From: Podarcis muralis
Lineage: Eukaryota
Direction of reading: 5' to 3'
NCBI RefSeq assembly: GCF_964188315.1
Contig: NC_135664.1
Location: 77,624,001-77,688,000, forward strand
DNA: 64,000 bases
Within the stretch, counting starts at the first letter, position 1, and each line of letters begins with the position of its first letter. This document shows, one piece after another, positions 8,560 to 42,035 of this stretch. Below the pieces are notes generated by a model that was not told the DNA's origin, ran no database searches, and saw only the letters and a list, made by a program, of their open reading frames with translations. The position numbers were made by a program, and so were the translations under genes.

Positions 8560-9600
8560 AAGCAGAAGAAGAGATGCAGCGCCTAGCCGGGACCCCAAGC
8601 CCCCTTTGCCAGAAGGGCTCCACCATCCCTGCCCCGAGCATCTCCCCCTCGGCGCTCGGCCCCTTCCCATCCAAACATTCGCGCAGCGCAGCGGGAGCTG
8701 CTGGGGGGGGGGGGGGCTTCTCACGTGACCTGCATCCGGCGCAGCCTCCCACGTGGGCGCTGCACCTGCCAAGCTCGCATTCTCACGTGCACCTGCGTGC
8801 AGCTGCCGCCCCGGGGGGGCCCCGTCCGGCGGGCCGAGCACACCAACCCCCCGGCCCGAGGCGGCTGCTCCCGGGAGACGGGCAGCCGGCTTGCCTTCGT
8901 TGGCAGGAGAGGGCGGCGAGGAGGTGCCGGGCCTGCCGCTTCCGTCCCCCGGGTGCGCTGCGCAGGCCCTTCCGCCCCCGCCCGGCGGCCCCCGGGCAGC
9001 CTCTCCAGCTCCCGTCCCGGCGGGGGCTCCGACTGGGCCGAGGGAGCGCGGCGGCCTCCCCGGGAGCCTGGCGGGCCCGGTCTGCTCGGGGCTCCGCGGG
9101 GCCTCGGCTCCCCCCTCCTCCCGCCCCCCCCCCGCCCGACTCACCGCGCTTCCCGTGCGCGAAGGCCACCACCACGAAGTAGTCGGCCAGGCGGGCCATG
9201 GCCAGGCGCGCGAGGGCGGCGTGGGGGGGCGCGAGGGCGCCGGGGCTCATCCCCGCCCGGCCGCGCCGCCTCCCGCCGCTGCCGCCGCCGCCTCCTCAGA
9301 CGCCGCCGCCGCCATCTTGCCTGGGCGGCGGGATGCGACCCAGCCCGGGACGCCCCAGCCAATGCGCGGGGCCCGGCGGCCGGGGAGGCTGCCCATTGGC
9401 CCTCCGCGGGGCCAGAGCCCGCCCCTTCCTTCCTCCGGCCCTGAGGGGCGGGGCCTCGCCGCCCGCCCGCCCGCCCGCCCCGGGTCCCTCCGCCGCCGGC
9501 TCTCTGGAGACGCTGCCTCCGACGGAGAAGGCGGAGGGTCCGCGGGGTCTCTCTGCCCGCCCGCCTCCCTCCCGGAGCTTGCGCCCTCTCGGTCGAGCAG
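8560..9600 (-). promoter_or_regulatory. SBF1: SBF1 CpG-island promoter: YY1/TISU motif (9308-9319), two CCAAT boxes (9359-9363, 9395-9399), GC boxes
   Basis: Very high GC/CpG content; minus-strand CAAGATGGCGGC; CCAAT and ATTGG; ccgccc repeats. Confidence 0.85.
9145..9199 (-). CDS. SBF1: SBF1 (MTMR5, myotubularin-related pseudophosphatase) coding exon 1, 55 nt; remaining exons lie left of the window
   Basis: Translates MARLADYFVVVAFAHGKR+G, matching the SBF1/SBF2 N-terminus (MARLADYF.lVAF is SBF1-like). Followed by a GTGAGT donor (plus-strand actcac, 9139-9144). Divergent from ADM2, as recalled for human. Confidence 0.93.
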
Positions 9601-21932: not shown

Positions 21933-24900
21933 CACAGGCCAGAGGACCAAGGCCTCTGCAGAGCCAGGCAGTCATCACACCCAGCTGCAGCTGTGCCAGG
22001 CGCCCTCGCTTGTGGAGGGGAGAGGCAGCTCCTCTTGTCCTGTTACCTGAAACTGTGGTGACGGTTGGAGAGAGGCTTTTGAACCTGGCCTGTGTGTGGG
22101 CTACGGGCCTTTGATGCAGCTGGCCTCCGCTCCCTCCTTGCCGCCTGCCTGCCAAGCGTACGTGTCCTGTGGCAGGTACAGCTCCCTTGCCTTGCCTGCG
22201 CTCCTCCCCGCCTCCCGCCCTGCTCCTTCCCTCTGGCCATCTCCCAGTCTCTCCCGCCTCCTCCCCTCCTCCAGACCAGTTCCTCTTCCCTGGTGGAAGG
22301 AAGCTGACATCCTTCTCCATGCCCCAACCTGACACATGCTCTCTCCTCTCCTCATTCATTCTCCCCCCCCCCCCGCCGCCCCATCCCGCTTCTCAAATAG
22401 AAAAGGTGGATCAGCAGGTTGCGTCAGGGCTAGGCCACACATAGTTTCTCTTGTGGTCTGGAAGAGACGGTTGCCGCCACCCAGAGAGACGTGCTGGCCG
22501 TGATGCCTCTCCAGGCAGCCAAGGCCGAGGGGCCTGGCCTCACGGGGGACCAAACAGAGGCCGTCCAAGGTCCTCAAGGAGGGACTGCTGGGGTTAGAGG
22601 GAGCTTCTGGGCTCAGCTCACGAGTCTCTTCACGACTGGTGCAGAGCATGGCCCTCAAGAGATGACCCCCCCTTGCTGTGTCCTGCCACAGAGGTGGGGG
22701 GCTGCCCTTCCTGGAACCACCGTCTTCCTATGAGGATGGCCAGCCAGGCAGGTCTGCATCTGCTCAGTTACAAAGGCCAAGAGCTGAGCTTTTAACAAGC
22801 ATCTGTCAAAAGCAAAAGCCGAGGTTGAAGTCTACCAGTTTCAAGCAATGAAATGTTGCTTCATTTAAATGTGTCAAATATTCCTTCTGCCCCAGCCGAC
22901 TTTTTGCCTCATTGATCTGAGAAGGGCAATAGTTCAGGGACAGAGCACCCGCTCCACATGCAGGGCCCAGGTCCAATCCGCAATGGCTGCGCATGGACCT
23001 TGCCTGAAACCCTGGAGAGCTGCTGCCAGTCAGTGCGGACAGTACTGAACCAGATGGAGCAGGGCTCTGACTTGGAATTCGGTGGCTTCCAAGGTTCCCA
23101 GCAGGACGTGGGCAAGGGGACCTGTCCCTGGACTGGGTGGGAACTCATCTCCCCACCCAAAAGGGGGCTCTGCCCCTGCTTCTCCTCTGATCTCATTCAG
23201 GATCTGGGTCCCCCACAGAGAGGACTGGGGGGGGGGGAGCCCTTTAAAAAGCAGCTTCCTATTACAGTAATTAATTCTGAGAGAAAACCCAAATACAGAA
23301 CATTAAGTTTTTTAACGGGAGTGAGTGGAAGAGCCGCAGTTGTCTCTGAGAATGGCAGCCATCTCCAATGGCCTGGGAGGCTGGCATGTCTATTGGCCAT
23401 AAAAGGACACAGCAGGGAGAAGGGGACACAAGTCACAGCTATACAAGTGTACACATGTGCGCGCATGCACACACACACAGCAAGGGTGCCCATCGTCCCA
23501 CACTCTGCACAAGCTCCACACACAAAGACCAAGTCATATTTTCTGACTCCCAGTACCAGACCTCACACGATTTTCTCCAAGAAAGATACCCAAGACTGTT
23601 GTCCTATGCCTGGGTTCTTGAGAGCGAATCACACTGAGCAAAGTGGACTTTAGGAGGGAACAGTCTGGTTTTCTTGTCTATGACATTGGAGGCAAAAGGG
23701 TCTTTCTCAGGCAGCCCATTCTCAAAAAAGCGCATGTCCCAAACTGCCTTATTCCTGCTGCTGTTAGGATGGAGGGGGATCCCCAGGCAGAGCCCTGAAA
23801 CTCAGTGGGGTTGTGGAGATGGAGATTCCTTTGGGCTATAGGAAAATTCGCCTGGGGTGCGAGGCTTGCCCTTCTCTGACCCTGTCTCACGTGTCCAGTG
23901 CCAACCTGATGCACCTGGCGGGAGGCTCTGGCAGTGGGGTCTTCCTTGCTGACCTTCAGGGCTAGCCAGGTCCTGGAGACGCCCATGTGCACCTCCAGGT
24001 GAGCACCTGACAAGCTGTTTAGGGGTTGGAAGGCAACCATGAGTACTTTGAATTGGGCCTGGCACCACAGTGGCAACCCTCAGGTTTCTCTCCCCGAGAG
24101 GCTGCGCTGTACACCCACCCAAATATGCTGACCCAGATCTGCAGCCTCCCCCACAGAGCCCTCTTCTTGAGTCAGGCTGGGCCTTTGTCTGTGCTTTTTC
24201 TGCTCTGACAGGCCTCACTCTCACCCTGCCTGGACCATCCCATGGAGAGGCAGACTCACCTGTGACGAGCACTCCTCCTCCTCCATGAGAAAGAATTTTG
24301 TGCGCAGTTTCTGGGCAAGGGCAGCCAAGCCGTTTCAAGCAACATTCCATGAGCCAGCCCTGCGAGGGCACATGGCGGCTCTGGGCCTGGGCAGTGCAGA
24401 AGTAGGTGTGGCCCCTGCACCCCCAGGGACCACATAGGCGGGGGGGGGGAGGCGGCTCTGATCCCCCTATAAACAGGCTGTGGCTGCTCCTGCAAGTATT
24501 TGTGCTCCTGCTCCAACATGCCTCTTTCCCTCCTGCTGCCAGCGGAGGGCGAGGGCTCATGGCACCTCTTCCATCCTCTCGTTGCAGGAAGCCCTGGGCT
24601 AGAAGCCACCCACCAGCCTGGCTGCGGAAGAGGCTGACGACAGAAGAGCTTTTGGACAAGACGGCCAGAATGTGGCCGGCCTGGAAGCCTCCCGTGGCGA
24701 CGCCAGGAAGCTGGCTCCACCTCTCCGTCCTCCCCAGGCGCAGACTGGATCCCCAGCAGCCTGGCAGGCCCCCCCAGCACCGGCTCCCATGGACTCCAGC
24801 CCCCCGTCCAAAGCGCCAGGCAGCCCCCCGCCTGCACCGCGCGCAGCTGATGCGTGTCGGCTGTGCCCTGGGCACCTGCCAAGTGCAGAACCTGAGCCAT

Positions 24901-24981
24901 CGGCTCTGGCTTCTGAAGGGCCAGTTGGGACTTCAGGAATCCGCCCCCATGAACCCCAGCAGCCCCCACAGCTATGGGTGA
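17398..24981 (+). CDS. ADM2: Adrenomedullin-2/intermedin precursor, join(17398..17546,24588..24981), 180 aa
   Basis: Kozak gccgccATG and hydrophobic signal peptide; donor CAG|GTGAGT at 17546; acceptor ttgcag| at 24587 with matching phase 2. C-terminus RVGCALGTCQVQNLSHRLWLLKGQLGLQESAPMNPSSPHSYG* is the diagnostic AM2 mature peptide with amidation Gly. Confidence 0.96.
18480..18631 (-). mobile_element. tRNA-Asn-headed SINE with CR1-derived tail
   Basis: Minus strand tggcgcaat...ggctgttaacc..aggtt.gtggttcaagcccacc is a tRNA-Asn(GTT) head fused directly to a CR1 3' tail. Confidence 0.8.
19002..19044. repeat. (GA)n microsatellite
   Basis: Read directly from the sequence. Confidence 0.95.
20737..20813. 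repeat. (CT)n(CCCT)n(GT)n compound microsatellite
   Basis: Read directly from the sequence. Confidence 0.95.
21090..21840 (+). mobile_element. Degenerate CR1 ORF2 fragment in the ADM2 intron, ending at a (CT)n(CA)n microsatellite
   Basis: YLDFSKTFDKV, ENWAETNRMK, RNDLGVLV and KADAILGCI motifs. Confidence 0.75.
21845..21930. repeat. (CT)n(CA)n compound microsatellite
   Basis: Read directly from the sequence. Confidence 0.95.
23660..24075 (-). mobile_element. L2 fragment
   Basis: AQFKVLMVAFQPLN motif. Confidence 0.6.
24588..24981 (+). CDS. ADM2: ADM2 coding exon 2 (prosegment and mature peptide)
   Basis: Contains the CALGTC ring, C-terminal SPHSYG and a TGA stop at 24979-24981. Confidence 0.96.
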
Positions 24982-25413: not shown

Positions 25414-25872
25414 AAGAAATGCCAGACTCCCCTCCCCTCCGGGTGTCCCTTGAGACTCGAGAAAGGCAGTCAGCCCAAGAGCCAAACACCCATCGAAGCA
25501 AACTGAAGGATGTGAGAGCAAGACAGCCTAGACCACCTTCCTTTTTATTTATTTATGCAATGTATTTCTATGTTGCTCTGCCATAAAACAACAGGGTGAT
25601 GTGCAGCAAAAAATGCAAACCATTTAAAAATGTTGGAGTTCCCATGGGGGGGGGGAGCACAGCCAGGGCCGGATTGAGGTTTGATGCGGCCCTCAGCTCC
25701 TGAAGGTAATGGGGCCCTATGTCCAGCTGTCCTTTGTCAACAACAAATTGTCGCTGTTTTTTGTGTTGAATATATGCTATATGGTAATTTATGGACCTAA
25801 CAGGCATCTCAGACCATTTGCACATGTTGCCAGGCTACCAGTCCATGCAGAATGGAGGCACCCTATATATAG

Positions 25873-26229
25873 GTAAAGGTAAAGGGACCCCTGACCGTTA
25901 GGTCCAGTCGCGGATGACTCTGGGGTTGCAGCGCTCATCTCGCTTTACTGTCCGAGGGAGCCAGTGTTTGTCCCCAGCTTCCGGGTCACGTGGTCAGCAG
26001 CACTAAGCCGCTTCTGGCGAACCAGAGCAGCGCACGGAAATGCTGTTTACCTTCTTGCCACAGTGGTACCTATTTATCTACTTGCACTTTGTGCTTTCAA
26101 ACTGCTAGGTTCTCAGGAGGTGGGACAGGGCAATGCGAGCTCACTCCGTTGCGGGGATTTGAACCGCCGACCTGCTGATTGGCATGCCTTAGGCTCAGTT
26201 GTTTAGACCAAAGTGCCACCCACGTCCCT
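25873..26229 (-). mobile_element. Sauria SINE nested in a MITE
   Basis: Full head-to-(accttt)n structure; 13-bp TSD accctatatatag (25860-25872, 26230-26242). Confidence 0.92.
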
Positions 26230-26559
26230 ACCCTATATATAGAAAAGAGCAAAGCAGTGATATTTGAGGGAGCAGGCTAGCAGGCGGGGCCCAGGACTTG
26301 CATCATAGGAGCTGACAAAACACAAAACACTGTTGCTGTATGTAAGTTTGATTTCATTTGTTTTTTATCTTATATTTTGGAAATGTGCACCCGGTTTCTC
26401 CACCCCTTTTGGGGGGGGGGGGTCCCAGGAGAGGGGGGCCCTAAGCTAGAGCCTGTTGAGCTTAGACGTAACCCCCCCCCCGGGAGCAGGCTCTGGGCGG
26501 GGGGCAAGGGGGAGAACTTTCTCTGGAGATCCCCTCCCGGAAGGGCCCCCCATCTGCTC

Positions 26560-27170
26560 GCCCCCCTTCCCAGGCGGATGCCCCGAGCAGCGAGGGAGAA
26601 GCGCCGCCCCGAGGGGACCCCCAGGGGCCATCTAGTCCCGCCCCGGCGAGGCCAGAGCTCCCCGGGGCCGGCGGGCCACCAGCTGCAGCGCAGGGCCGCC
26701 CCCGGGGGAAGAGGACGACGCCCGGCCCCCTCCGCCCGGACCCCGGAGCGACTCCTCGGGCTCCGCCGGGGAGGACCGGAAGGAGCCCGTGGGGCGACGG
26801 GGCTTCGGGCGAGACTCCGGAAGTGCGTCATCCCCGCGCGCCCCGGCGGGAAATTCAAAGCGGCGGCGGCGAGAGCGACGCGCACGAGGCTGCCTTCCTT
26901 CCCCCGTCGTCCCGCCGCCCGCTCTTCCCCGGCTGCTCCCCCGGAGCCGGGCGCGGAGAGCCAGCGCTGCCTTCCCTGGAAGACCCGGCCTCCCTGGCCT
27001 CGGTCTCTCTCGCCCGGCTTCCCGCTCGGCCCGATGGCGCAGCGGCGAGGGGTCTCGGCCGAAGAAGCCCGCCGGCCGAGGAGGAGCGCGGCGTAAGTAG
27101 CCCCCGGAGGGCGAGGCCCGGTCAGGGGCCCCTTTCAAGCGGGGCGGGTTCCTCCGGGTAGACAGCGGGA
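26560..27170 (+). promoter_or_regulatory. GCNA: GCNA CpG-island promoter: ETS (CCGGAAGT, 26817-26824), CRE half-site (GCGTCA), E2F/CDE-N4-CHR (GGCGG GAAA TTCAAA, 26845-26859)
   Basis: Motifs read directly from the sequence; no ATG between them and the start codon at 27034. Confidence 0.8.
27034..27092 (+). CDS. GCNA: GCNA coding exon 1
   Basis: MAQRRGVSAEEARRPRRSA; GTAAGT donor; inside the CpG island. Confidence 0.75.
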
Positions 27171-30100
27171 GAGGTCGGCCCCTTCGGCAGAATAGAAATA
27201 TGGGGGGGGGGGGGGGAGACACGCCTCTTCGTGGCTCAGGAGAAATGCTAAACTAATCAAGAGAAGGCGTTAGAAGCAAGTAACCAACAGCATTGAAAGG
27301 ATTAAGCACATTCATAGCACAGATTAACTAAAAAAATATATATCACATTTATTATGTTATTTGAATGTTCTTTTGGAGATATGGCCCAAATTCCATTGTC
27401 TGCGTTAGGCTGGGGTGTCTTATTTTATGTGTGTATGGTATGTTGCAACAACCCAATAAAAAGTAGAAAAAGAAATTGAAATATAACGACATCTATGTGT
27501 TTTAACCCCTTTTTGACGCCTTTAAATCTTTTAAGTAAATAGTGCTCAGTGGCATGAAGACATATATAGATGCTCTTCTGAAGAGAACTGGAATTGTGAA
27601 TAAAACATGGTTGCCAACCCTGGAAACAACCCTGGAGTAATTTCACTCTTACTCTTGCCTTTCCGTGTTGAAGATGAACACCTGGAACACGAGAAGAGCT
27701 GCTACTCCAGGCCAAAGGGTCCACCTGGTTTAGCCCCCCTCTTCTGCCAGTGGCCCCCCAGATGCCCCAATGGTGGAAGCCCCTGGGCAGAACCCAAGAG
27801 CCCTCTCCCCATTGGTGATTCCCAGCAACTGGTATTCGGAAGCATCGCTGCTCCAACAATGGAGGCAGAGCATCATCATTGTGGCTCATAGCCATCGATA
27901 GCCCTCTCCTGCTCCATGAATTTGTCCAATCCTCTTTTAAAGCCATCTAGTCTGGTGGCCATCACTGCCTCCTGTGGCAGGGAGTTCCAGAGTTTAACAG
28001 TTTCCACGCTTAGTGTTTCCTTCACCTGGCTGTAAATTCAAACAGCCTTTTGACTTCCAACACAGACGGGCAGCGGCATTGAGTTCTGAGGCCGCACTGA
28101 ACCTGCAGGCTCTTGAGAGACTCGCTCCCAGTGCTGAGGAGAGAGTCATCCACCAGAGCACTTCATAGCGAACCCATTGAAAAGCAGCCAGTCTCCCATC
28201 CTAAATTGGAAATGTCAGAACATTGTGTGCTCCCTGCCATATGCCACTGCAGTGAAGACTTTTGATCAAAGCTTCTTTCTGTGCATTTAGAATATGGCTG
28301 TGCAATGGCTAGCCACTTTCCTTTTACTGTTGTCTGCTTTTCAGCTCCACGAGTTCAGGCAGCGATGACGAGTTTGAAAACTGTAAGTAAAAGCTAATTT
28401 CCTCAGTGGGTCTAAAGATAAGTTATAGCACAAAACCCCCCTCAGAAAAAGCTACTTGTGTAGAAGAAGAAGAAGAAGAGTTTGGATTTGATATCCCACT
28501 TTATCACTACCCGAAGGAAAGCGGCTCACAATCTCCTTTCCCTTCTTCCCCACAACAAACACTCTGTGAGGTGAGTGGGGCTGAGAGACTTCAGAGAAGT
28601 GAAGCCTGGGGAAGGAGTTACCCTCTTTCTCCGGGTTGCACCAACCCAGAAACCTTTTCCTATGTACTGATAGGTTCCCTTTCCATTACACTTTTGCTCT
28701 CAACTAAAATTGGTTCTTCTGTTGCCTTTGGGGTTAACCTGGTCCCCAGCTTTATTGGGGTGCAGGGAGGCTTGTGTTTTCTTCAGACTGCTGCACTGTC
28801 AGCATCTCTTCTCACCCACCGAAAAGCATTTCTTCCCTTGACAGTCGGTCCTCTTTCTGCCATGGACCTGAGTCTCTTGGCCAAAGGTTTCTTCTCTCCT
28901 GTTCTGCAGCTACTGGGGTGAAGCCCTTTGCCAGGCAGGCAGATTCCCTTTCCCTTGAGCTCCGTAACAGATGCCACCTGCATATAGATGCCACCTAACA
29001 TTGAAACGCAGCACAACCTCTGAGTAGGACTTGGTGGGATGCCACCCCAGCACCTCAGGAGGGCAGGCTCTGTGTGTAGCATCGGGGGGGGGGGGGGCTC
29101 AGCAGCAACCTGCCACCTGCTTCTGACTAATTTTGGGTCAGTGGATGGGAGGAGGAGGAGCCCGTCTGTAAAGGCGAGTGAGCCTGACAGTTTAACCTGT
29201 GACTCGTCTCTGGTGGGTCCTCCTGGGGGCCCCAGAGCCAGCGTCTCCTTTGAGGTCTTTCTGCTGGGATCAGCTTCATGCTGGCATCTGAGCCCCTTGA
29301 ATGTGGACCCTGTTCCTTCATCCCTCGTTTCATTTCAACGCTGGCTAGTTTTTGAAGCTGCCACCTTTGTGGGCTTTAGAAGAACAGATTTCAGGAAACA
29401 AAAAAGTGACATTTCTCCCCCTTTCATGGTTTTGACTTAGTTTTATCTAGAATGAAGACCCCCAGACCTGCAACATGCTGCGTTCCAAGGACACAGAGCA
29501 GGTGGGTTCTGCCCAAGGGGGGAGGGCTGGGGTGGGGTTTTTCAAACGGAGAATTGGAAATTGTTTCAGCTGCCTTAAAGTGAGTAGAGTTCTGACTTGG
29601 CATGTGAATTACATAATTGGAATTTGAATTACATAAGCCCACAACTTACACACCTTTAATTTGTGTGTGTTCAGATTCATGCCCTTGGCATGCATAAATA
29701 AATAAATAAGGTAGGTAGGTAGGTAGGTAAATAGAGAGGAGGTGGGCATCCGGGAAAAAAGACTTTGGCAACCCCACCCACCACTGAGCCCAGTATCTGT
29801 TTGGACTATACAAGATGTTGTCTTCAGGCATGATCCTGGAATGCAACCCTTGTGTAAGTTGTGGGCTTACTGTATATTTCACAAGCAAGACCAAAGACTT
29901 GTTCTGCACCCTTCTTTGCCTTCTGACGCTGCTCCCTTTGTCTCTTGTGTCCCAGACTGGATGATTCCAAGGATGATTTCTTCACGTACCTCACAAGCAA
30001 ATATGGATCTGGCAAAAAAGGCAAGTGATCATGGAAAGACCCAGCTGCCAGCCGGAGGAGGCCGGGTGAGCTGTCCTGGTCCAAGGCAGGCCATCCATGT

Positions 30101-33100
30101 GTTTGTCCAGGGAGCAGAGTAGCATCTGGGTGGGGTGGGGTGGGGGGGTTCCCACTTCAAAATGCCTGTTTTCTCCCCCCCCCCCCGGCTGCGTTTTGCC
30201 ATCTCAGCTGGGCTGATGCGGCCCACGCAAGAAACCTGCTCCCTCCCTGGGGACCCTGCGGAGCTCTGAACCTGGGGAGCAGTTGGTGGCCTCCTTTCAC
30301 CCCACAGGAGTGCAGGAATTTGGGCCCCATGTCGGGGCGATATGAGATGGTTGGGGGCACTCACCTTGCTGTGATTTTATTTGCATGCCACCCTTCCACA
30401 GTTCAAACCATGCTCAAGGCAGCTTACAACATAAAAAAGTATATGACTCCAACACAACAAAAGTAGCCATAAACGATACGTAGAACCTTACAAAATACAA
30501 AACCAAACTGAACAGTTTCCACATAAATCACAACCAAATCTAAAATAAGGATCCCCCCCCCCAAAAGCAGCCATAACCGCCTGCCCAAACTAAAAGGCCC
30601 AAGCAACACCCCAGCCCAAGAGCCTTCAGAGCTGAGTTGGTGCACTCTCATGGTCTCTAAATGCAGTGATTGATCTGCTCAGTTTGGCTCCCAAGAAGCG
30701 CCTGTGAAATGTTCTTTGCTGACTTGCAGGGCCGAGGTCTGCTCAGGCGCAAGAGGAGCCTGGGGCGCCTGGAAAGGAAGCTGCTCCCTCTGCCTCGTTT
30801 CTGCCTCGCCTTGTGTTCAGTGAGACTGACAGCGATGATGACGACGACGACTCCGTCTTTGCCAAAGGCACCCCAGGGAACCCCCAGCAGCCCAGACGAG
30901 CGTGTCAGGCCTCAAAGTGGACCTGGAGGAGCTTGCAACGCCCTGTCGCTCGCAGGGGCAGCCCCGACTCTCCCTTGCGCGAGGGGGAAAGGAGTTGCTG
31001 CACGGATCAGTCTGGAGGCACCGCCCAGAGCCAGGAGACAAGAGCAAGCGCTGCGCTGGGATCCGACACCTCCTCCGACGAGGAGGAGATGGACAGCCTC
31101 CTGGTGCGCCTGAAGCAGAAGATGGTCCTTTCTGCAAGGAAGGCGGCGGCGGCAGACCCCAAGGGAGCCACTGGTAAGAGGCAGCTCTGCTCCCCCCTCA
31201 GGAGGGGCCCGGGGGGTAGGAGGAGGGGGCTTCCAGGGTCCTCCCTCCCTCAAACCCCGTGGCCACCATTCAGAGATCGCTGTAGCTTTGGTCCTCAGTT
31301 TGGTTGGGGGAGGAATGCGGGTGGCTTTGTGGGTTAAACCACAGAGCCTAGGGCTTGCCGATCAGAAGGTCGGCGGTTCGAATCCCCATGACGGGGTGAG
31401 CTCCTGTTGCTCGGTCCCTGCTCCTGCCCACCTAGCAGTTCGAAAGCACGTCAGAGTGCAAGTAGATACATAGGTACCTCTCCGGCGGGAAGGTAAACGG
31501 TGTTTCTGTGCTCTGCTCTGGTTCTCCAGAAGCGGCTTAGTCATGCTGGCCACATGAGCCGGAAGCTGCACGCCGGCTCCCTTGGCCAGTAAAGCGAGAT
31601 GAGTGCCGCAACCCCAGAGTCGGTCACGATTGGGCCTAATAGTCAGGGGTCCCTTTACCTTCAGTTTTACCTTGGTTGGTGGAAAGAAAGTGGGGAAGTG
31701 TTTTGTGCAGACGTAATGTTATTTTTCAAAAGAGGAAAGGCTGGGGACCCTCATTCTTTCTCGGGAAGGAGAGTGAAGGCAGGCTGGGTCCTCAGCACCC
31801 ACTTAACACCTTTGGGGGGGTGCAGGGCAAAGGGGGAGATTTCCTGAAACTGCAGCTGTAGGACCTTATTTGCCTTGGGGAAAGTGGGAGCTTGAGGGGA
31901 AAGGGAGCTTTCTGTATGAGGGAGAAGAGCGAGAGCCAGCTAGACTGGACTCCCCCCCCCCCCCGCCAAGGTAACTGAGAAACCATCTCGGGCTGGATCC
32001 CCTGCTGCTTGGGGCAGGTGTCCACAGGTGGCGGGTTGCACATCTCTTTGCCTGCGAGGCTCTCCGTACAGGAGCCGTGAATAAGTGTCCTCCATGAGTA
32101 CATTCTCCCTGAGCTTGAAAACAATCTGCAGGACTATTCCCCTCACCCCCAGTCCTCTTCACACTGTCGTATCATTAGAAATATCCTCATTTTAGGTAAT
32201 GTTAGCCCAGTCCTGGTCCTGAGGACCATTGGCTTCAGAAGTGTGTGGAAACAGGGAACTGGCTGCTGTTCATTGGACTGGTGACGGGTCAGAAGAGGTT
32301 GGGGTTTGCCAGAGGGCCCTGATAAAGCGCCGTGTGGGGGATGTGGGAATGTTCAGAGAGACAGGAGAGGATATATTGTTTAATAATGTCCTTCCCAACT
32401 TGTGTTAACAAGTTCTATAATTTAGCAAAGTAACATTCCCCTTTTAAACTTTTACAGCGGATAGGTTTGCCAGGCTTGTATAAGTTTCCTGGTAAAGCCC
32501 CTTTTATTCCCTCTTAAAAGAGTAGACACAACATAGTCTTATATAAAAGTAAAAAATAGTTTACTCACACATCTTGTTCGCAAATGGATCCCAGAAGGCA
32601 GACTTAAGTTACAAAATATATACACCTGGAATCTATCCCATAAGGAGAAAGTTCCTTTGTACTCTCTTGGCTGGAAGCATCTCAGGCTAAGGAGATGTTG
32701 CTTCTTTGAGGAATGGAGTCAGAGAGAGAGATGGCTGCCTCCCCTGTGCTCTTTTGTAACCTGCACAGGTGAGGTCGCGCCCACCTCTGGTCACATGTAG
32801 AGGAAGTCGGTCCCAGCCCAGGAGGAAACAGGAAGTTCCGACTGGCTGGTTCAGAACCCCCTTTTTATTTCCACTCTAGGAATGTTGTATTTGACAGCTC
32901 TGTGTTTCACACCCCACGGGGGACGTGGCTGGGCTGAGTGTCCAGGAGAGTTGTCTTCCTCCGCCTCCCGTAAGGGTGCAAGTCCTCTGGGTCACCTGAA
33001 GGGTTCAGGGCAGGCAGAAGTGCTGCTTCTGCTTTGCACCAGGTGTTCGCTGACCCTCTTGCGGGATATGGGGGTGGCCATGGGCTCAGCTAGCGCTAGA

Positions 33101-36100
33101 GGGGGCTAAGCCAAGCTTAGGGAGCCCAGCCAGGCCTGTCGAGGCAGATCTTGCTCACGAGGGCTGAGCGGAACCTGCCAGAGGAGAAGCCGGCCTGCCT
33201 GGATCGCGGGTGTCAGAAGTGAGCAGCAAAGAAGGGCTCGGAATTGTTCTGCACGAGGAGCAGGCACTTGGGACGGGGTAGCTGGGCCAGGTGGGCCTTT
33301 GCTTGGGCCCTGCAGATGTTTTACGCTGCCAGACACTTGATTGGGGAGCAGAAAGGGCTTGTGAAGCTGTTTGGCCATGTGCTTTGCCCTGGCTTCCACT
33401 TGGGGCCTTGTCTGCCTGTGCTGAACCTTTGGCTTGTGATTGGTAGAGAGAAGAAACGTCCCGCCTCCCCTTGGAAGCGCCCGCCCGGCTGTGAAGAGCG
33501 AGAGCGCCCTTCCCACGCGGCCCAGATCGCCTCTTCCGGCCACGCCGATCTCTGTGCGAGCTCCGAAGAGCAAGGTGCTCGGTGACATCACCCCGTCCCA
33601 CCAGACGCAGATGAGGTGAGCTCCTCTTTTGCTCATGCCTCTGTTCCCAGCTTTGGACTCTGGCAAAGCAGCTGGCCCAGGCCTGAAGTGGCGAGCCTGG
33701 AAGAACCAGCAAGCCCAGCACCTCCTCCCTGAGGGCATGCCCTCTGCCTTCCATTCGCAGCCTGCAGACTGGGATGCACGTTCTGGATCCGGACCCCAGT
33801 GTCAGTGGCTTCCATACAGGAGCTGCAGAAAAATGTGGTTGCTCAAGGCAGCCCTGGACTCAGAAAGGTTGGCAACCTCTGGACTAGTCCCTGGCGAGTC
33901 TCATAGAGGGAGCCTGGGCTGCCCTTTCCTTCCCTCTCATGGGTCTTTGCCTCCTCAGGAGTTCCTGCCAGGTGCAGGGCTGCTTCTTGCAAGAGCTGTC
34001 CGACCCAGAATCCCAGCACTCTAAGCATTTCCGGAGAAGGAAGGGGGAGCTGGCCCAGAACCTCTATGATTTCTACAACCGTTCCGTGTTTGAGCAAAAG
34101 GTACAGAGCTGGAATGGGGTTGTTTCTGCTCCAAGCAGATGGGCTGCTGGGTCTGGGTTCTGCTCGTGGCTGCTGACCCCTTGTCTCTCCTCCTATGGAT
34201 CCTGTGGCCTCTTGAGAGGGTTTGGGAAAGGGGGCAGGAGGGCAGCAGCGAGAGGTTCCTTGCCTGCTATATGAGCTGCCTCTGGACTCTTGCCTGGATT
34301 CCTGCATCAGCAAAGCTGAAGTAAAGAGTCACGCGACTGAGTGGGGGCTGTGCAAAAGCAATGCTGGGCTCTACAGTCCAGTAATGCTGGGCTCTACAGG
34401 CTCCCTACTTTGAAACCAAAGAGAAGACCGAGAGGAAGATTGTCTGGTCTCTGCTCCTCCGCAGAGCCAAGCTGCACAAAGAGGGCTTAGCGCACGCCTG
34501 CCCTGGGGAGTCAGTGAAACGAAAGAGCACAGGGAGTGTTGTGAAAGGCCAGCCGGCCGGGCTCCCCTTGTCTCTGGCCAGCCTGGCCCTCAGCTCAGAA
34601 GTCAGGAGTGTGGCTCCAGGGCCGGGTAGGAGCTAAGCTGCTTCTCCCCCTTGTCCTTTCAGTTGCCAGAGAATATGGAGATTGTCTGGAACAAAAAGAT
34701 GCGGAAAACTGCCGGGTGCTGTGTGAGTGGCCAGCTGAAGGGCCCTGAGGGGCAGCGCTATGCCCGGATAATGCTGTCAGAGAAAGTCTGTGACTCTGCA
34801 GGCAAGTGGGGGGGGGAGGGGTCTTCCTGGGGTCCTGAGGCTAATGCTGCGTTTGGATGGCATCGCACAGATTCAGAAAGGAGCTTTGAGGTTGAAGAAG
34901 TAGAGGGGAGAGTAGTGGTATTCTTTTTATTTCCTTGCATCCAAATCCCACCTTTCTTCCACCCTGGAGCTCAAGGGGGGGGGGTCTATGTGGCTCCCAG
35001 GCTGTCACCCATCCAGGCACTGATCAGGCTCAGATTTGCTTGATCTCAGTAAGGGTGGGGCCTTATCCCAGGTCACATCCTGCTCCCCACCATAGTAGAA
35101 GACGTGTCTTGATTACTGGCTTGGGACATTATCCCAAGCATTCCTCTTTGTAAACTCTAGCGTGAATGCCATGCTGTCAATCAAGACCCCAGGGGTCACA
35201 ATGTATTGACAGGCCTTGACCAAGCGTGGCAGGTGCAGCCTGTCTTCCCTTGCCCTGCTGGTTCTCTGGTCTCCTGGATAGGCTTGTTCAAGGAAGTGCA
35301 AGGGAAAAAGGGTCACTCAAGGTGTGGGAAGCTGGTGAGTGGGGATAGGCGATATATTGATATATCATCCAAAACCGGTTTGAAGTCCATTTTGTGATAT
35401 TGGTTTCATAATTCTTGATCTGACTATATATCGCAAATCGTCTCTGTGTGTTATGCAAAAATGCGGGGGAAACTGTGAAGCCAGCCAATGCCTCTCCATA
35501 GCTCCATCCTTATTTCAGGCGCTGTGATATGTCACTATATTGCAGTTTAGCTGGGGATATCTTGTGATTTGGAAAGCCAGAGATGGCCCAGCCCTGGTGG
35601 TGAGCCTGGTGCATGTGCGCCTGCGCATCAACTGGAATCGTGTCTCCTCGCTCCATGCCTCTCCTGTCTTGCGCAGATCGACTCCGGGACACTCTGATCC
35701 ACGAACTGTGCCACGCAGCTGCCTGGCTGATCCACGGGGTCCGAGACGGCCACGGCCGGTTTTGGCGCTTATATGCAAAGAAGTCGGCTGTGGTCCACCC
35801 AGAGCTCCCAGTGGTGTCGCGATGCCACAACTATGAGATCAAGTACAAGTTCACCTACGAGTGCTGCCGGTGCAAAAACACGTGAGTGAGGATCAGGGCC
35901 TGTTCCTGGTGAGGCATTTGAGCCCCGGTGTGCGATCCCGGCTCAGCTATTGTAGCTAGTCCTGAGTGAGACCCATATCCTGTTCGAAGAGAGTCTCTGC
36001 ATCTGCTAGTGACTCTAAGAATCTCCAGCTTTCCAGGGCCCTGATCCTGTAAGCCCTCATGGTTTTGTGGGCTAACCCCACAGAAGGTGATCAGACCCCA

Positions 36101-37837
36101 CCCATCCTGCCCCCTTCAGCTTTTGGAATGAAGTTTGGAAGCTATCCAGATATATTGGATTTTGCAGTCAGTGCCCTGTGAGGGGAGTGTGGGGCTGCCT
36201 CCTGGCCCCCAGGAAGAGCCTTCTTCACTCTTGAGCTCTGCCCTGCTCAGCCCTTGAGCTCTTTATCAGCTTGGTCTCCGTGGTGAGGATCAAGGGGAGC
36301 GAGGGCTTGAGAGCTGAAGGAGAGCCCTGTGGCTGCTGGGTCAGGCCAAGGGGGCCCTTCTAGGCCACCCTCCTCATCCCACAGAAGCCAGCCCAGATGC
36401 CCCCCAGGGAAGCCCCCACGCAGCAGAAAGTGGAGAGGGGAAAGCTCTTCTCCCTCTCATAGCTCCAGAACCCGTGGACATCCAAGGACATGGGAAGATT
36501 CAGGACAGGCAAAAGAAAGTATTTCTTCACATGGCACATAGTTTGTGGAACTCATTCCCACAAGAAGTAATGGCAGCCACTACCTTGGGTGGCTTCAAAG
36601 GAGGATAAGTCGAATACATGGAGACTAAAAGCTGTGTTCTCCCTCCCCTGTCGGAGGCAGTAAATACTCTGTTGGGAATCACAAGTGGGGAGATTAGCTG
36701 CTGCTGCTGCTGTGCTCAGGTCCGGCTTCTGGGACCTGGGGGGCCCCTGGTTGGCCACTGAGGAGAACAGGATGCGCCCCTTTGGCCAGATCCCGCAGGC
36801 TCATCTGACGTTCAGTACAAGGTGAACCAAAGCCCATCCTCACCAGATGCCTAACTTAAAGACTCTGCCTTAAGTGCCAGGCTAAAGCGCCCAGTGAGGA
36901 GGGCATGGGCACCTCCCAGGGTGGGAGTCATTGTAGCGAAATAAAAGGGGGGCCAGAACCCCCAAAGTCCTCTTCCTCTCTTCCCGCTGCCTTCTCCATC
37001 GCTCATATAAACCCAGTGCCAGAGCTTGGCCCGGATGACGGTCTCCCTAACACTCTGCAGGAGGAGTAACATCATCAGGGGGTCCTGCAGGAGGACAGGA
37101 GAGAAGCCCATGTCATGGTGGCTGCAGAATTTGCCTTCCTGGGAATCACCGGGGAGATTCTCGGCCTCAAGGTTGAAAGCAGCCTGCTGAGTCCTGCTGT
37201 CTTGGACACAGCTGGGGGGCAACTGGTCCAGGGACCAGTTTGGAATTCGCTCCCTCTTTGGGGCCAGAGAAACTAGCCAGGCCTGCTCACAGCTCATGGC
37301 TCCAGGGGAATAGTTGGCGTTGCTCTTTCAAGAAGGGCTTCTGTTAACCAACCACTGAATGTGTCTAGATGGGCTTATTGTGTGCCTGCTTTGGGCTCTG
37401 ATCTGCAGGATCTTTTCATGTGTATGGGTGGGCTTCCGGTTGGGCATCAGGAGTGCTGGCCCTGTGGCCTCTTGCTGAATCCGGCTGCCAGTTAGTGGGT
37501 GTTGCTTACGGCTGCCTCCTGCGCCCGCCCGTCTGCTGCTCCCTCAGGCGCCTCCTGTGTTTTTGTTTCCAGGATCGGGCGCCACTCCAAGTCTCTGGAC
37601 ACCCAGCGCTTTGTCTGTGCCCTTTGCAAGGGGCAGTTTGTGCTGTGCCAGCCCACGCGCAAGGATGGCACACCAGCGAAAGCACCGCTCACGCCGTTTG
37701 CAAAGTTTGTGAAAGAAAACTACGGCTCTGCTAAGCACTCGCAGAAGGGGCTGAGCCACGGAGACATCATGAAGAAACTCAGTGCAGATTTTGCTGCCCA
37801 AGTTTCTCTCACCCCACAAGCGACTCTCCCACACTAG
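27034..37837 (+). CDS. GCNA: GCNA/ACRC SprT-family metalloprotease, join(27034..27092,28345..28382,29441..29501,29956..30020,30730..31173,32880..32969,33447..33615,33959..34100,34663..34801,35677..35881,37573..37837), 1677 nt, 558 aa
   Basis: All exon phases chain without stops. Domains: acidic IDR, CxxxGCFL..L motif, SprT (WNKKMRKTAG...DRLRDTLIHELCH), CxxC..CxxC Zn finger and HMG-like TPFAKFVKENY...HGDIMKKLSADF. C-terminal exons are high confidence; IDR exons are less certain. Confidence 0.9.
28345..28382 (+). CDS. GCNA: GCNA exon 2
   Basis: ttttcag| STSSGSDDEFEN |GTAAGT; phase 2 to 1. Confidence 0.8.
29441..29501 (+). CDS. GCNA: GCNA exon 3
   Basis: cttag| FLSRMKTPRPATCCVPRTQS |GTGGGT; completes the SDDEFENFLSRMKTP motif. 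Confidence 0.75.
29956..30020 (+). CDS. GCNA: GCNA exon 4 (GC donor)
   Basis: cccag| RLDDSKDDFFTYLTSKYGSGKK; AAG|GCAAGT; phase 1 matches the exon 5 acceptor at 30729. Confidence 0.7.
30355..30655 (-). mobile_element. L2 3' fragment in GCNA intron 4
   Basis: ctgtaagctgccttgagcatgg-type L2 terminus on the minus strand. Confidence 0.55.
30730..31173 (+). CDS. GCNA: GCNA exon 5 (acidic IDR)
   Basis: ttgcag| GPRSAQ...FSETDSDDDDDDSVF...SSDEEEMDSLLVRLKQK...KGAT |GTAAGA. Confidence 0.8.
31311..31671 (+). mobile_element. Sauria SINE
   Basis: Near-complete copy similar to those at 25873 and 53702. Confidence 0.9.
32401..32896 (-). mobile_element. LTR-like element in GCNA intron 5; same family as 39921-~40450 (+)
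   Basis: Reverse complement aligns with the 39921 copy (tcaa.tacaacattcc..tagagtgga...aacttcctgtt; ataagact..gttgtgtct...ttaccagga). Confidence 0.7.
32880..32969 (+). CDS. GCNA: GCNA exon 6 (symmetric, possibly cassette; alternative in-frame acceptor gives 32898..32969)
   Basis: Strong pyrimidine tract plus TAG; GTAAGG donor; open in phase 1 to 1; no conserved motif recognised. Confidence 0.45.
33447..33615 (+). CDS. GCNA: GCNA exon 7
   Basis: Open frame ..KVLGDITPSHQTQM; AG|GTGAGC; phase 1 to 2 matches exon 8; acceptor is weak. Confidence 0.6.
33959..34100 (+). CDS. GCNA: GCNA exon 8
   Basis: SSCQVQGCFLQELSDP...LAQNLYDFYNRSVFEQK, the conserved pre-SprT segment. Confidence 0.92.
34663..34801 (+). 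CDS. GCNA: GCNA exon 9 (GC donor)
   Basis: LPENMEIVWNKKMRKTAG...LSEKVCDSA; CAG|GCAAGT is required to join to DRLRDTLIHE. Confidence 0.92.
34985..35050 (-). mobile_element. 5S rRNA-derived SINE fragment
   Basis: Minus strand gagatcaagca..tctgagcctg.tcagtgcctggatgggtgacagcctggga resembles the 5S internal control region. Confidence 0.5.
35340..35596. mobile_element. MITE of the tagggctgggcgata TIR family
   Basis: Degenerate TIRs; TSD ctggtgag/gtggtgag (7 of 8); relatives at 6487-6600 and 53074-54689. Confidence 0.75.
35677..35881 (+). CDS. GCNA: GCNA exon 10 (HELCH active site)
   Basis: DRLRDTLIHELCHAAAWLIHGVRDGHGRFW...YECCRCKN; GTGAGT donor. Confidence 0.95.
37573..37837 (+). CDS. GCNA: GCNA exon 11 (Zn finger second half and HMG-like box, stop)
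   Basis: IGRHSKSLDTQRFVCALCKGQF...TPFAKFVKENY...; TAG stop. Confidence 0.93.
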
Positions 37838-38374: not shown

Positions 38375-39300
38375 GCTTCTTTGAGAACAGAAGCCTGGAG
38401 CAGGCCAGTGCTACCTAAATCAGCCAAGAAACAAACGCTGCCACCTGAGATTGGGCTGGGAAGTGGGGCTCTGTGCTTTGTGATATGGTGGCTTTGAGAC
38501 TGAATCCTGACAAGACAGAAGTACCGTTTTGGGGGGACAGGAGGCGGGCGGCTGTGGAGGACTCCCTGGTCCTGAATGGGGTAACTGCCCCTGAAGGACC
38601 AGGTGCGCAGCCTAGGAGTCATTTTGGACTCACAGCTGTCCAAATTCTGTGCCCAGGTCAGCTGTTTACCAGCTCCATCTGGGACGCAGGCTGAGACCCT
38701 CCCTGCCCGCAGACTGCCTTGCCAGAGTAGTGCATGCTCTAGTTATCTCCTGCTTGGGCCACTGCAATGTGCTCTACGTGGGGCTACCTTTGAAGGTGAC
38801 CCGGAAACTACAAGTAATCCAGAATGCGGCAGCTAGACTGGTGATGGAGCGGCCGCCGAGACCACATAACACTGGTCTTGAAAGACCTACATTGGCTTGT
38901 AGTATGTTTCCAAGCACAATTCAAAGTGTTGGTGCTGACCTTTAAAGCCCAGTATACCTGAAGGAGCGTCTCCACCCCCATCATTCTGCCTGGACACTGA
39001 GATCCAGCGCCGAGGGCCTTCTGGTGGTTCCCTCACTGCAAGAAGCCAAATTACAGGGAACCAGGCAGAAGGCCTTCTTGGTAGTGGCACCCATCCTGTG
39101 GAACGCTCTCCCACCAGATGTCAAAGAGAACAATAACTACCAAACTTTTAGAAGACATCTGAAGGCAGCCCTGTTTAGGGAAGCTTTTAATGTTTGATGT
39201 ATTACGGTATTTTAATATTTGGTTAGAAGCTGCCCAGAGTGGCAGGGGAAGCCCAGCCAGATGGGCAGGGTATAAATAATAAATTATTATTATTATTATT
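38375..39300 (+). mobile_element. L2 LINE ORF2 3' portion
   Basis: RSLGVILDSQLS, VHALVIS.L.HCNVLYVGLPLKVTRKLQVIQNAAARLV; (aat/tat)n tail. Confidence 0.88.
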
Positions 39301-41021: not shown

Positions 41022-42035
41022 TCAAGGCTGCTGGCTGCTTGTGGGCATCGCTTGCTGCTTGCTGCTGCCCTTGGGGCTCCAGAGTGGTGGCAAACCTTTG
41101 GCGGCGGCTGCTTGAGCATCCCTCTTTGCGGACCCTTGAGTGCTCGCGCCCCAAGAGGATTTTTGTTCACCCTTGGGAGGCTGGCTACTGGGAGTGGGGC
41201 CAGTCTTCTGAGCCGCCTGTTGCTGGAGCCAGCGGCGCATGTGTGCCAGGCCCCGCCCATACTGGAGCTCCCACAGGAGCTGCTCCTTCTGCTCCCTCAG
41301 CTGCTGCCGGAAGGCTTTCAGGCCTTTAGCTCGCTGGATGAGGCCGAGGAGCTCGTTGCGCAGCCGCCTGTTCTCCTCCTTCACTCGGTTGGTGTGCTGG
41401 ATGAGGCTGCGCACGGCTTCCTTCTCGGCCTTCTTGGCCAGGGCCTGGACCTTCTGCTCCGCCTGCACCTCGTACTCCGCCTTCTGGTGCAGGTACTTGC
41501 TCTTGAGCAAGCGCATTTCCTCCGAGTGCTGGATCTTCATGGCCAGCAGCTCCTTCTCCAGCTCCCGGATGCGGAGGAGCTGCTCGGACTGCAGCTCCTT
41601 GAAGGGCTTGAGCTCCTCAACCTCCTTGGTCATGAGGGAGAACTTGGTCTCCATCTCAATCAGCTGGCTCCTCATCTCCGTCTCCTTGTCCGTGTACTGG
41701 GAGGTCAGCTCCTCCTTCTGCTTCAGGACGCTGGTGAGGTCAAAGAGGTTCTGCTCGTTGAGGGTGGTGATGGCGTCCTGGCACCGGGCAGCGCGCCTGT
41801 TCAGGTAGCTCAGGTAGGCCTTGCTGTTCTGCCGGATCTCCTGCGCTTCCTTGTCCAGGAACTCGTTCCTGCTCTGGAACTGGTCCACCCATTGCGTGTA
41901 GGTGTGGATGTGCTCCGCCAGAATGAGGGACTCCTTCTTCAGGGACTGCTCTTGCTCCGTCAAGAGCGGCCCAGTCGTGCTCTGGCTCTTGGCGATGCTC
42001 TTCCGAGCCTTGGACCTGGTCTTCTTTGTCGCCAT
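41022..42035 (-). CDS. CCDC166: CCDC166-like coiled-coil protein (DUF4515 family), 337 aa, uninterrupted CDS
   Basis: Aligns by recall with CCDC166 (LNEQN..DL...EL...Y..RE..MR.QL.EME...; ELKPFKELQ.EQL.RIRELEKELL.M; AEKEA.R.LI.HT). Kozak cacagcATGG; in-frame upstream TGA; splice acceptor at 42064-42065. Orthologue versus paralogue is not resolved. Confidence 0.82.
   Translation of the reverse strand: MATKKTRSKARKSIAKSQSTTGPLLTEQEQSLKKESLILAEHIHTYTQWVDQFQSRNEFLDKEAQEIRQNSKAYLSYLNRRAARCQDAITTLNEQNLFDLTSVLKQKEELTSQYTDKETEMRSQLIEMETKFSLMTKEVEELKPFKELQSEQLLRIRELEKELLAMKIQHSEEMRLLKSKYLHQKAEYEVQAEQKVQALAKKAEKEAVRSLIQHTNRVKEENRRLRNELLGLIQRAKGLKAFRQQLREQKEQLLWELQYGRGLAHMRRWLQQQAAQKTGPTPSSQPPKGEQKSSWGASTQGSAKRDAQAAAAKGLPPLWSPKGSSKQQAMPTSSQQP

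What the first reader, a model, noticed from the sequence alone, without database searches (positions are those of the whole stretch)
27034..37837. Intact, intron-containing GCNA where MIOX is expected: synteny break and possible move off the sex-linked block
Seen: SBF1(-) and ADM2(+) are followed 2 kb later by GCNA, then CCDC166-like and a KRAB-ZNF gene, with no MIOX-like exon recognised in the 39 kb after ADM2. Known (recalled): the human order is SBF1-ADM2-MIOX-LMF2 on 22q13, and GCNA lies beside OGT on Xq13 in the block homologous to chicken 4p, which is reported to form part of the lacertid Z. Inference: a DNA-level (not retro) relocation or duplication of a germline genome-stability protease onto another linkage group, possibly an out-of-Z move or an autosomal backup, forming a small germline-gene island with CCDC166.
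Basis: partly seen in the sequence, partly recalled or inferred. Interest (0 to 1): 0.75.

Follow-up and report, generated by a model that had tools for sequence, protein, structure and literature searches.

The report
Old squamate relocation of GCNA gene
The wall lizard's germ-cell DNA-repair protease gene GCNA really does sit next to ADM2 instead of next to OGT, but snakes, monitors, dragons, anoles and worm lizards share this arrangement, so it is an old gene relocation and not a recent escape from the lacertid Z chromosome.

Summary
Window 27034-37837 (+) holds an intact 10-exon GCNA gene of 528 codons. It has an SprT-like HExxH protease domain, a Zn ribbon and an acidic disordered N-terminus. 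It is identical to the NCBI-annotated Podarcis muralis LOC114605338. It lies 2.05 kb downstream of ADM2 and 3.2 kb tail-to-tail from a DUF4515 (CCDC166-like) gene. No MIOX or LMF2 exon is found anywhere in the 64 kb.

- Birds and platypus keep SBF1-ADM2-MIOX, and a bird keeps OGT-GCNA-BRCC3. The lizard order is therefore derived.
- The gene kept its introns, so the move was at DNA level. Only GCNA moved; no OGT or BRCC3 fragments came with it.
- ADM2-GCNA adjacency is also seen directly in a garter snake.
- GCNA shares a chromosome or scaffold with ADM2 and/or the CCDC166-like gene in lacertids, an amphisbaenian, anguimorphs, agamids, Anolis and snakes. In a skink it does not.
- The move therefore dates to stem Episquamata, more than 150 Myr ago. 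That is before the lacertid Z arose (85-150 Myr), so "out of Z" fails on timing.
- Only one GCNA lineage per species was seen, so there is no sign of a backup copy.

Still open: the state in geckos and tuatara, and where squamate MIOX lies. Interest is modest.

The parts
9100..9199 (-). SBF1 (MTMR5) first coding exon; bounds approximate (peptide MARLADYF...)
   Evidence: ORF 8783-9250 (-). A weak tblastn match to the 5' exon of bird SBF1 in L003. SBF1 is the head-to-head neighbour of ADM2 in bird and platypus.
24517..24981 (+). ADM2 (intermedin) last coding exon and stop; the 5' bound is approximate
   Evidence: Pfam Calc_CGRP_IAPP. The best word-search hit is ADM2 of Podarcis muralis, 94% identity, on a 78,068,875-bp record. 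Sense RNA reads cover 24.6-25.4 kb.
25600..26400 (.). High-copy SINE-type repeat block in the ADM2-GCNA spacer
   Evidence: Summed word depth of 1e5-1e6 in three DNA runs. All short-read contigs break here.
26400..27200 (+). GC-rich, CpG-island-like region around GCNA exon 1; presumed promoter
   Evidence: Sequence read. GC is 0.575 in the 26001-28000 bin; one search shows the densest GC/CpG stretch at about 26.4-27.1 kb. The promoter role is inferred.
27034..27092 (+). GCNA coding exon 1 (ATG at 27034; GT donor)
28345..28382 (+). GCNA exon 2 (acidic SSGSDDEFEN motif)
   Evidence: Conserved by blastn in the Thamnophis locus L001 at 21783-21839.
29441..29501 (+). GCNA exon 3
   Evidence: Conserved in the skink locus L008.
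29956..30020 (+). GCNA exon 4, with a GC donor (GCAAGT)
30730..31173 (+). GCNA exon 5, the acidic intrinsically disordered region (D-run)
33447..33615 (+). GCNA exon 6
33959..34100 (+). GCNA exon 7 (start of the SprT-like domain)
   Evidence: Matches as a separate piece in skink L008 and bird L010.
34663..34801 (+). GCNA exon 8 (SprT-like), with a GC donor (GCAAGT)
   Evidence: Pfam match.
35677..35881 (+). GCNA exon 9: catalytic HELCH (HExxH) motif of the SprT-like protease
   Evidence: Pfam SprT-like, E=9e-11. Query of the representative-protein search..
37573..37837 (+). GCNA exon 10: Zn ribbon, C-terminal tail and stop codon (37835-37837)
   Evidence: Pfam Zn_ribbon_SprT.
41022..42035 (-). 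CCDC166-like (DUF4515) single-exon gene, 337 aa, tail-to-tail with GCNA
   Evidence: Pfam DUF4515, E=6e-15. A 100% database match, plus orthologues named CCDC166-like in many squamates. Falls in the paralogue clade of the tree.
56410..58044 (+). C2H2 zinc-finger array exon of a ZNF gene (a neighbour, not part of the relocation claim)
   Evidence: Pfam zf-C2H2 and zf-H2C2_2.

Best explanation
The stretch is the single, functional GCNA (ACRC) orthologue of Podarcis muralis. GCNA is an SprT-type zinc metalloprotease with an acidic disordered N-terminus. In other animals it removes DNA-protein crosslinks in germ cells and early embryos. In the ancestor of Episquamata (lacertids and amphisbaenians plus snakes, anguimorphs and iguanians), this one gene left its ancestral vertebrate position just downstream of OGT. 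It took its introns with it and presumably its own CpG-island promoter. It came to lie 2 kb downstream of ADM2, where birds, monotremes and humans have MIOX. Shown here: the intact gene; the derived adjacency; its sharing by snake and, at chromosome level, by all sampled episquamate lineages; and the ancestral orders in bird and platypus. Inferred: the mechanism (a small DNA-level duplicative transposition followed by loss of the source copy, or two nearby rearrangement breakpoints); the promoter; and the germline function in lizards. Because the move is older than the lacertid Z chromosome, it was not driven by sex linkage in lacertids.
For: Gene integrity and identity: and (equals XP_028602322.2 / LOC114605338 on the 78,068,875-bp record). 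Snake adjacency: Thamnophis ADM2 followed by a 423-aa SprT-like/Zn_ribbon_SprT gene; a GCNA exon-2 homologue 3.7 kb after the ADM2 exon. Same chromosome or scaffold length for GCNA and ADM2 and/or the CCDC166-like gene: Rhineura 136,227,758; Zootoca 72,123,690; P. lilfordi 71,836,976; Lacerta agilis 70,688,303; P. raffonei 79,254,795; Elgaria 101,845,647; Varanus 138,280,312; Candoia 84,500,290; Phrynocephalus 111,457,702 (locus tags 015589 and 015590); Anolis 207,039,880; Thamnophis 263,166. Ancestral state: bird and platypus SBF1-ADM2-MIOX; bird OGT-GCNA-BRCC3-CMC4; Lagopus GCNA on a 19.0-Mb chromosome but ADM2 on a 194.9-Mb one; alligator 83.6 versus 255.1 Mb; Carmell 2016 Fig. 3. Skink Tiliqua: GCNA on a 48.7-Mb chromosome with no ADM2 within 10 kb upstream, and the CCDC166-like gene on an 80.2-Mb chromosome with no ADM2 or GCNA in 53 kb. 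Single orthologous lineage: all squamate GCNAs form one clade with 100/100 support, one gene per species. DNA-level move of GCNA alone: exons 7-10 of the window match as separate pieces, in the same order, in skink and bird, and no OGT, BRCC3 or CMC4 fragments are in the window. Timing of the lacertid Z: PMC6534595.
Against: The states in geckos and tuatara were not determined; the gecko CCDC166 gene turned out to be the other paralogue, so it does not mark the ADM2 locus. I could not show that the skink GCNA lies beside OGT, because no gene lies within 10 kb of it. For most species the evidence is same-chromosome, not proven adjacency. In Anolis no GCNA exon lies within 10 kb of the CCDC166-like gene. 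A degraded source copy beside OGT in Podarcis cannot be excluded without a genome-wide search. No read or contig spans the SINE at 25.6-26.4 kb. Expression evidence is only a trickle of sense-strand RNA reads in the bins that hold exons 1-4.
Confidence: 0.8

Rival explanations
1. A lacertid-lineage move, or an autosomal backup copy of GCNA, off the Z-linked GGA4p block.
For: GCNA is ancestrally beside OGT on the GGA4p/4A-type chromosome. Part of that block forms the lacertid Z. The window's chromosome carries GGA1/22q13-type genes.
Against: The same arrangement occurs in a snake. The same chromosome is shared in the amphisbaenian Rhineura, in anguimorphs, agamids and Anolis, none of which has the lacertid Z. 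Lacertid Z genes are autosomal in amphisbaenians and teiids, and the Z is 85-150 Myr old. Only one GCNA lineage was seen in lacertids.
Confidence: 0.03
2. The ADM2-GCNA adjacency is older than Episquamata (stem Squamata or Lepidosauria), and the skink arrangement is a secondary rearrangement.
For: The gecko and tuatara states were not determined. I could not place the skink GCNA beside OGT. Squamate genomes show many rearrangements (PMC13005343, abstract listed).
Against: Tiliqua has GCNA, the CCDC166-like gene and (within 10 kb) ADM2 all apart. This reading needs an extra event. Bird, platypus and alligator show the unmoved state.
Confidence: 0.13
3. Assembly artefact: ADM2 and GCNA were joined wrongly across the repeat at 25.6-26.4 kb.
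For: No short-read contig from three independent DNA studies spans the SINE block.
Against: There is no N in the window. The same order and spacing occur in an independent Thamnophis assembly. Chromosome-level co-location holds in about ten other independently assembled species, with consecutive gene identifiers in P. lilfordi, L. agilis and Phrynocephalus. The unique flanks on both sides are present at normal depth in all three DNA runs laid, which come from three independent studies.
Confidence: 0.02

Closest known systems
GCNA/ACRC of birds, turtles, crocodilians, amphibians and mammals (beside OGT; X-linked in therians)
   Same: It has the same domain set: an acidic IDR, an SprT-like HExxH protease and a Zn ribbon. 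It shows 66-75% identity over the structured 230 residues. Exons 7-10 match as the same separate pieces, in order, in the bird and skink genes. It is one orthologous lineage.
   Different: The genomic position differs. Here it lies downstream of ADM2 in a 22q13/GGA1-type block, and OGT, BRCC3 and CXCR3 are not its neighbours. Unlike mouse Gcna, it keeps the protease and Zn-ribbon exons.
GCNA of snakes, anguimorphs, iguanians and amphisbaenians
   Same: It occupies the same derived locus: directly ADM2 then GCNA in Thamnophis, and the same chromosome as ADM2 and/or the CCDC166-like gene in the others. Identity is 80-86% over the structured part.
   Different: Nothing of note. The Podarcis gene is one ordinary member of this group. 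NCBI often labels these genes '-like'.
Out-of-X / out-of-Z gene traffic (retrogene export from sex chromosomes)
   Same: A germline gene now lies off a block that is sex-linked in therians and lacertids.
   Different: It is not a retrocopy (10 exons). No parental copy was seen. The move predates the origin of the lacertid Z.
SPRTN (DVC1), the somatic SprT-type DNA-protein-crosslink protease
   Same: It shares the SprT-like HExxH metalloprotease fold family (Pfam PF10263).
   Different: All the nearest database relatives are GCNA/ACRC and not SPRTN. It has the GCNA-type acidic IDR and C-terminus.

Membership tests
GCNA/ACRC (germ cell nuclear acidic peptidase) | SprT-like metalloprotease domain with an HExxH motif | tested here: met
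   HELCH lies in exon 9. Pfam PF10263 scores 80 bits against a cut-off of 25.6 on the annotated protein, whose exons match the window exactly.
GCNA/ACRC (germ cell nuclear acidic peptidase) | Zinc ribbon/finger after the protease domain | tested here: met
   PF17283 scores 31.7 bits against a cut-off of 28.1.
GCNA/ACRC (germ cell nuclear acidic peptidase) | Acidic, intrinsically disordered N-terminal region | tested here: met
   Exons 2 and 5 carry SSGSDDEFEN and SETDSDDDDDDS runs. The region diverges fast and has no Pfam domain. No disorder predictor was run.
GCNA/ACRC (germ cell nuclear acidic peptidase) | C-terminal HMG-box-like DNA-binding region | tested here: inconclusive
   No Pfam HMG hit at E<=0.01. 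The tail is conserved with other GCNAs.
GCNA/ACRC (germ cell nuclear acidic peptidase) | Orthology: groups with vertebrate GCNA as a single lineage | tested here: met
   All 120 best hits listed that carry a name, apart from generic or evidently mislabelled ones, are GCNA/ACRC. The squamate clade has 100/100 support, with lacertids inside it. The tree used P. lilfordi and Zootoca proteins, not a joined window model.
GCNA/ACRC (germ cell nuclear acidic peptidase) | Conserved synteny beside OGT (used by Carmell 2016 to define orthologues) | tested here: not met
   The window has ADM2 upstream and a CCDC166-like gene downstream, with no OGT, BRCC3 or CMC4 fragments. This is the finding itself. 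It does not undo orthology, which rests on sequence.
GCNA/ACRC (germ cell nuclear acidic peptidase) | Germline / early-embryo expression and DNA-protein-crosslink repair activity | not testable with these tools
   There are only sparse sense-strand reads, in the bins holding exons 1-4, from one RNA run of unknown tissue.
Retrocopy / retrogene | Intronless copy of a spliced parent | tested here: not met
   The window gene has 10 coding exons. Its four 3' exons (7-10) match as separate pieces, in the same order, in skink and bird.
Out-of-sex-chromosome relocation | The source region was a sex chromosome when the gene left | tested here: not met
   The arrangement is shared with snake, amphisbaenian, anguimorph and iguanian lineages. 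The lacertid Z is younger than the lacertid-amphisbaenian split.

The most novel reading that the evidence does not exclude
The one-gene, intron-retaining transfer of GCNA from the OGT side to the ADM2 side is a clean rare genomic change that marks Episquamata (absent in skinks; geckos to be checked). It took a germline genome-integrity protease off the GGA4p/X-type block before that block became sex-linked in lacertids and, by its title, in Furcifer chameleons. In those lineages GCNA therefore escaped hemizygosity and sex-chromosome silencing, in contrast to therians, where GCNA is X-linked and rodents lost its protease domain.
Probability: 0.12. Interest if true: 0.5.

Novelty: new member of a known kind. 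Interest (0 to 1): 0.3.

Why it matters
The gene itself is ordinary and already annotated. The new element is its position. A single intron-bearing gene changed linkage group once, deep in squamate history, at the place where other amniotes have MIOX. This gives three things. First, a simple presence/absence marker for the Episquamata node. Second, a caution for orthology pipelines that rely on synteny; NCBI names several of these genes "-like". Third, a correction to any reading that links GCNA's autosomal position in lacertids to their Z chromosome. I found no description of the relocation in the paper library.

Tried and rejected
(1) ADM2 look-ups in alligator and Pelodiscus showed no neighbour within 10 kb, so they were uninformative.

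(2) Look-ups of the Eublepharis and Lagopus GCNA isoforms failed because only the longest product of a gene is on record. Two look-ups were lost.

(3) I used the gecko CCDC166 gene as a marker of the ADM2 locus and then rejected it. The tree shows the gecko genes are the other paralogue, the true CCDC166 next to a kinase. The gecko state is therefore undetermined.

(4) The Anolis and Tiliqua CCDC166-like loci showed no GCNA, ADM2 or MIOX within their flanks. For Anolis, co-location rests on chromosome length only.

(5) Short-read contigs could not bridge the SINE at 25.6-26.4 kb, so the junction was not confirmed from reads.

(6) A search for noncoding conservation, or for carried-along neighbour fragments that might define the moved segment, found exons only.

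(7) Papers on squamate gene loss and rearrangement do not mention MIOX, ADM2 or GCNA.

(8) Earlier scan notes hold nothing on OGT, MIOX, LMF2 or other 22q13 genes in this genome.

Exons were searched by reference, and full-length searches used database proteins by id.
Full report
WHAT IS THERE

The window belongs to a 78,068,875-bp record of Podarcis muralis. The ADM2 exon and the DUF4515 gene match proteins on that record.

On the + strand, from the ATG at 27034 to the stop at 37835-37837, lies a 10-exon gene:
- exon 1, 27034-27092
- exon 2, 28345-28382
- exon 3, 29441-29501
- exon 4, 29956-30020
- exon 5, 30730-31173
- exon 6, 33447-33615
- exon 7, 33959-34100
- exon 8, 34663-34801
- exon 9, 35677-35881
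- exon 10, 37573-37837

The exons total 1587 nt, or 528 codons plus the stop, with no internal stop. Every acceptor is AG. Seven donors are GT and two are GC (GCAAGT, after exons 4 and 8).

The inner peptide of each exon is an exact substring of NCBI's P. muralis GCNA proteins for LOC114605338 (XP_028602321.2 and XP_028602322.2). Those proteins pass Pfam's curated cut-offs for SprT-like (80 bits) and Zn_ribbon_SprT (31.7 bits). Exon 9 carries the catalytic HELCH motif. Exons 2 and 5 carry the acidic runs typical of the GCNA disordered region.

NEIGHBOURS
- SBF1 exon 1 lies at about 9.2 kb on the minus strand.
- The ADM2 last exon ends at 24981, 2,052 bp before the GCNA ATG.
- A 337-aa DUF4515 gene, named "CCDC166-like" in other squamates, lies at 41022-42035 on the minus strand. 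It is 3.2 kb tail-to-tail from GCNA.
- A C2H2 zinc-finger array lies at 56.4-58.0 kb.
- MIOX and LMF2 exon ORFs from a bird and from platypus find nothing in the 64 kb. The same queries detect each other across bird and platypus down to E=1e-21.

IS THE ORDER DERIVED?

Yes. In Lagopus the order is SBF1(-), ADM2(+), MIOX(+), then a 716-aa gene on the minus strand, with no Pfam family on record, where human has LMF2. In platypus it is SBF1(-), ADM2(+), MIOX(+).

In the bird Cinclus, GCNA follows a 1045-aa TPR protein (OGT). It is followed by BRCC3 and CMC4, on a 21-Mb chromosome. Lagopus GCNA is on a 19.0-Mb chromosome while its ADM2 is on a 194.9-Mb one. In alligator the lengths are 83.6 and 255.1 Mb. 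Carmell et al. 2016 identified GCNA by conserved synteny in chicken, zebrafish and elephant shark.

So OGT-GCNA and ADM2-MIOX are the ancestral states.

HOW OLD IS THE CHANGE?

In the Thamnophis scaffold, ADM2 is followed on the same strand by the 423-aa SprT-like/Zn-ribbon gene. A GCNA exon-2 homologue lies 3.7 kb after the ADM2 exon.

The word search with a full-length squamate GCNA, together, shows that GCNA sits on the same chromosome or scaffold as ADM2 and/or the CCDC166-like gene in these species:
- Rhineura
- Zootoca
- P. lilfordi
- P. raffonei
- Lacerta agilis
- Elgaria
- Varanus
- Candoia
- Phrynocephalus (consecutive locus tags 015589 and 015590)
- Anolis carolinensis

In the skink Tiliqua the picture differs. 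GCNA is on a 48.7-Mb chromosome with no ADM2 within 10 kb upstream. The CCDC166-like gene is on an 80.2-Mb chromosome, with neither ADM2 nor GCNA in 53 kb.

The simplest reading is one event in stem Episquamata. I could not determine the state in geckos or tuatara. The gecko "CCDC166" genes belong to the other paralogue, so they do not mark this locus.

RELOCATION OR DUPLICATION?

Each species shows one GCNA gene, and all squamate GCNAs form one clade with 100/100 support. The only extra copies are near-identical Anolis entries on unplaced scaffolds.

Exons 7-10 of the window match as separate pieces, in the same order, in skink and bird. The move was therefore at DNA level. No OGT, BRCC3 or CMC4 fragment accompanies the gene, so only GCNA moved.

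A decayed source copy beside OGT cannot be excluded without the whole genome.

THE SEX-CHROMOSOME IDEA

Rovatsos et al. 2019 state three things:
- The lacertid Z is homologous to parts of GGA4p and GGA17.
- It arose between about 150 and 85 Myr ago.
- Its genes are autosomal in amphisbaenians and teiids.

GCNA is already on the ADM2 chromosome in an amphisbaenian and is adjacent to ADM2 in a snake. It therefore left the GGA4p-type block before any lacertid Z existed. "Out of Z" fails on timing.

An earlier unchecked note of this scan puts the Z marker MARS2 on another sequence record. That agrees with the window being autosomal, but I did not test it.

ASSEMBLY

The window has no N. Three DNA runs from independent studies carry the unique sequence on both sides at normal depth. 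None bridges the high-copy SINE at 25.6-26.4 kb. The independent snake assembly, and about ten chromosome-level assemblies, argue strongly against a misjoin.

EXPRESSION

One RNA run of unknown tissue, about 12% of which was read, gives sparse reads in the bins that hold exons 1-4. All have the orientation seen for the ADM2 reads. This is weak evidence of sense transcription.

THE CCDC166-LIKE NEIGHBOUR

The tree shows a well-supported clade (100/97) of "CCDC166-like" genes in skinks, cordylids and episquamates. It is separate from the true CCDC166 of the same species, with which the gecko genes group weakly. Its adjacency to GCNA is an episquamate feature. A germline role is untested, so the "germline island" remains speculation.

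VERDICT

It is a real, derived, DNA-level relocation of a single, already annotated gene. It is shared across Episquamata and is older than the lacertid Z.

I found no paper describing it. Interest is modest. It is useful as a rare-genomic-change marker and as a caution for synteny-based orthology.

Exons were searched by reference, and full-length work used database proteins by id.

Noticed in passing
window 30021-30022 and 34802-34803: Two of the nine GCNA introns use GC donors (both GCAAGT), after exons 4 and 8. The annotated proteins use both.
   Followed up: partly
window 26578-27108: NCBI isoform X1 of LOC114605338 (680 aa, P0463) starts 152 codons upstream of the conserved ATG. It reads through the GC-rich CpG-island sequence. 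P. lilfordi, Zootoca and the older P. muralis models start at 27034.
   Followed up: partly
window 25600-26400, 27800-28000, 28400-28600; similar ORFs at 31362-31571(-) and 53755-54147(-): These are very high-copy SINE-like repeats, tRNA-related by their ORF signature '...GFEPPT'. Summed contig depth reaches 1e5-1e6, and RNA reads run on into unlike sequence.
   Followed up: no
Anolis carolinensis GCNA cluster: Besides the copy on the 207-Mb chromosome, identical or near-identical GCNA proteins are annotated on two 1.23-Mb unplaced scaffolds. These could be haplotigs or recent duplicates.
   Followed up: no
L009 (Tiliqua, 80.2-Mb chromosome): Skinks (Tiliqua, Lerista) carry two CCDC166-like paralogues plus the true CCDC166. 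The Tiliqua gene model P0143 spans 33 kb although the DUF4515 coding hit is a single 0.8-kb piece.
   Followed up: partly
same genome, other records (earlier notes s1-189836, s1-189890): Wall lizards are noted to have a second, intron-containing TAF1 paralogue next to HTATSF1. TAF1 lies in the same human Xq13 neighbourhood as OGT and GCNA. This could be a second DNA-level copy from that region, or a coincidence.
   Followed up: no
loci L002-L007: The ADM2 / CCDC166-like region lies within about 1-2 Mb of a chromosome end in Lagopus, alligator, Pelodiscus and Anolis. The Podarcis window starts more than 52.6 Mb into a 78-Mb record (note s1-152903), so its position along the chromosome may also have changed.
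   Followed up: no
window 38400-39000: Reverse-transcriptase-like ORFs (a LINE fragment) lie in the GCNA to CCDC166-like spacer.
   Followed up: no
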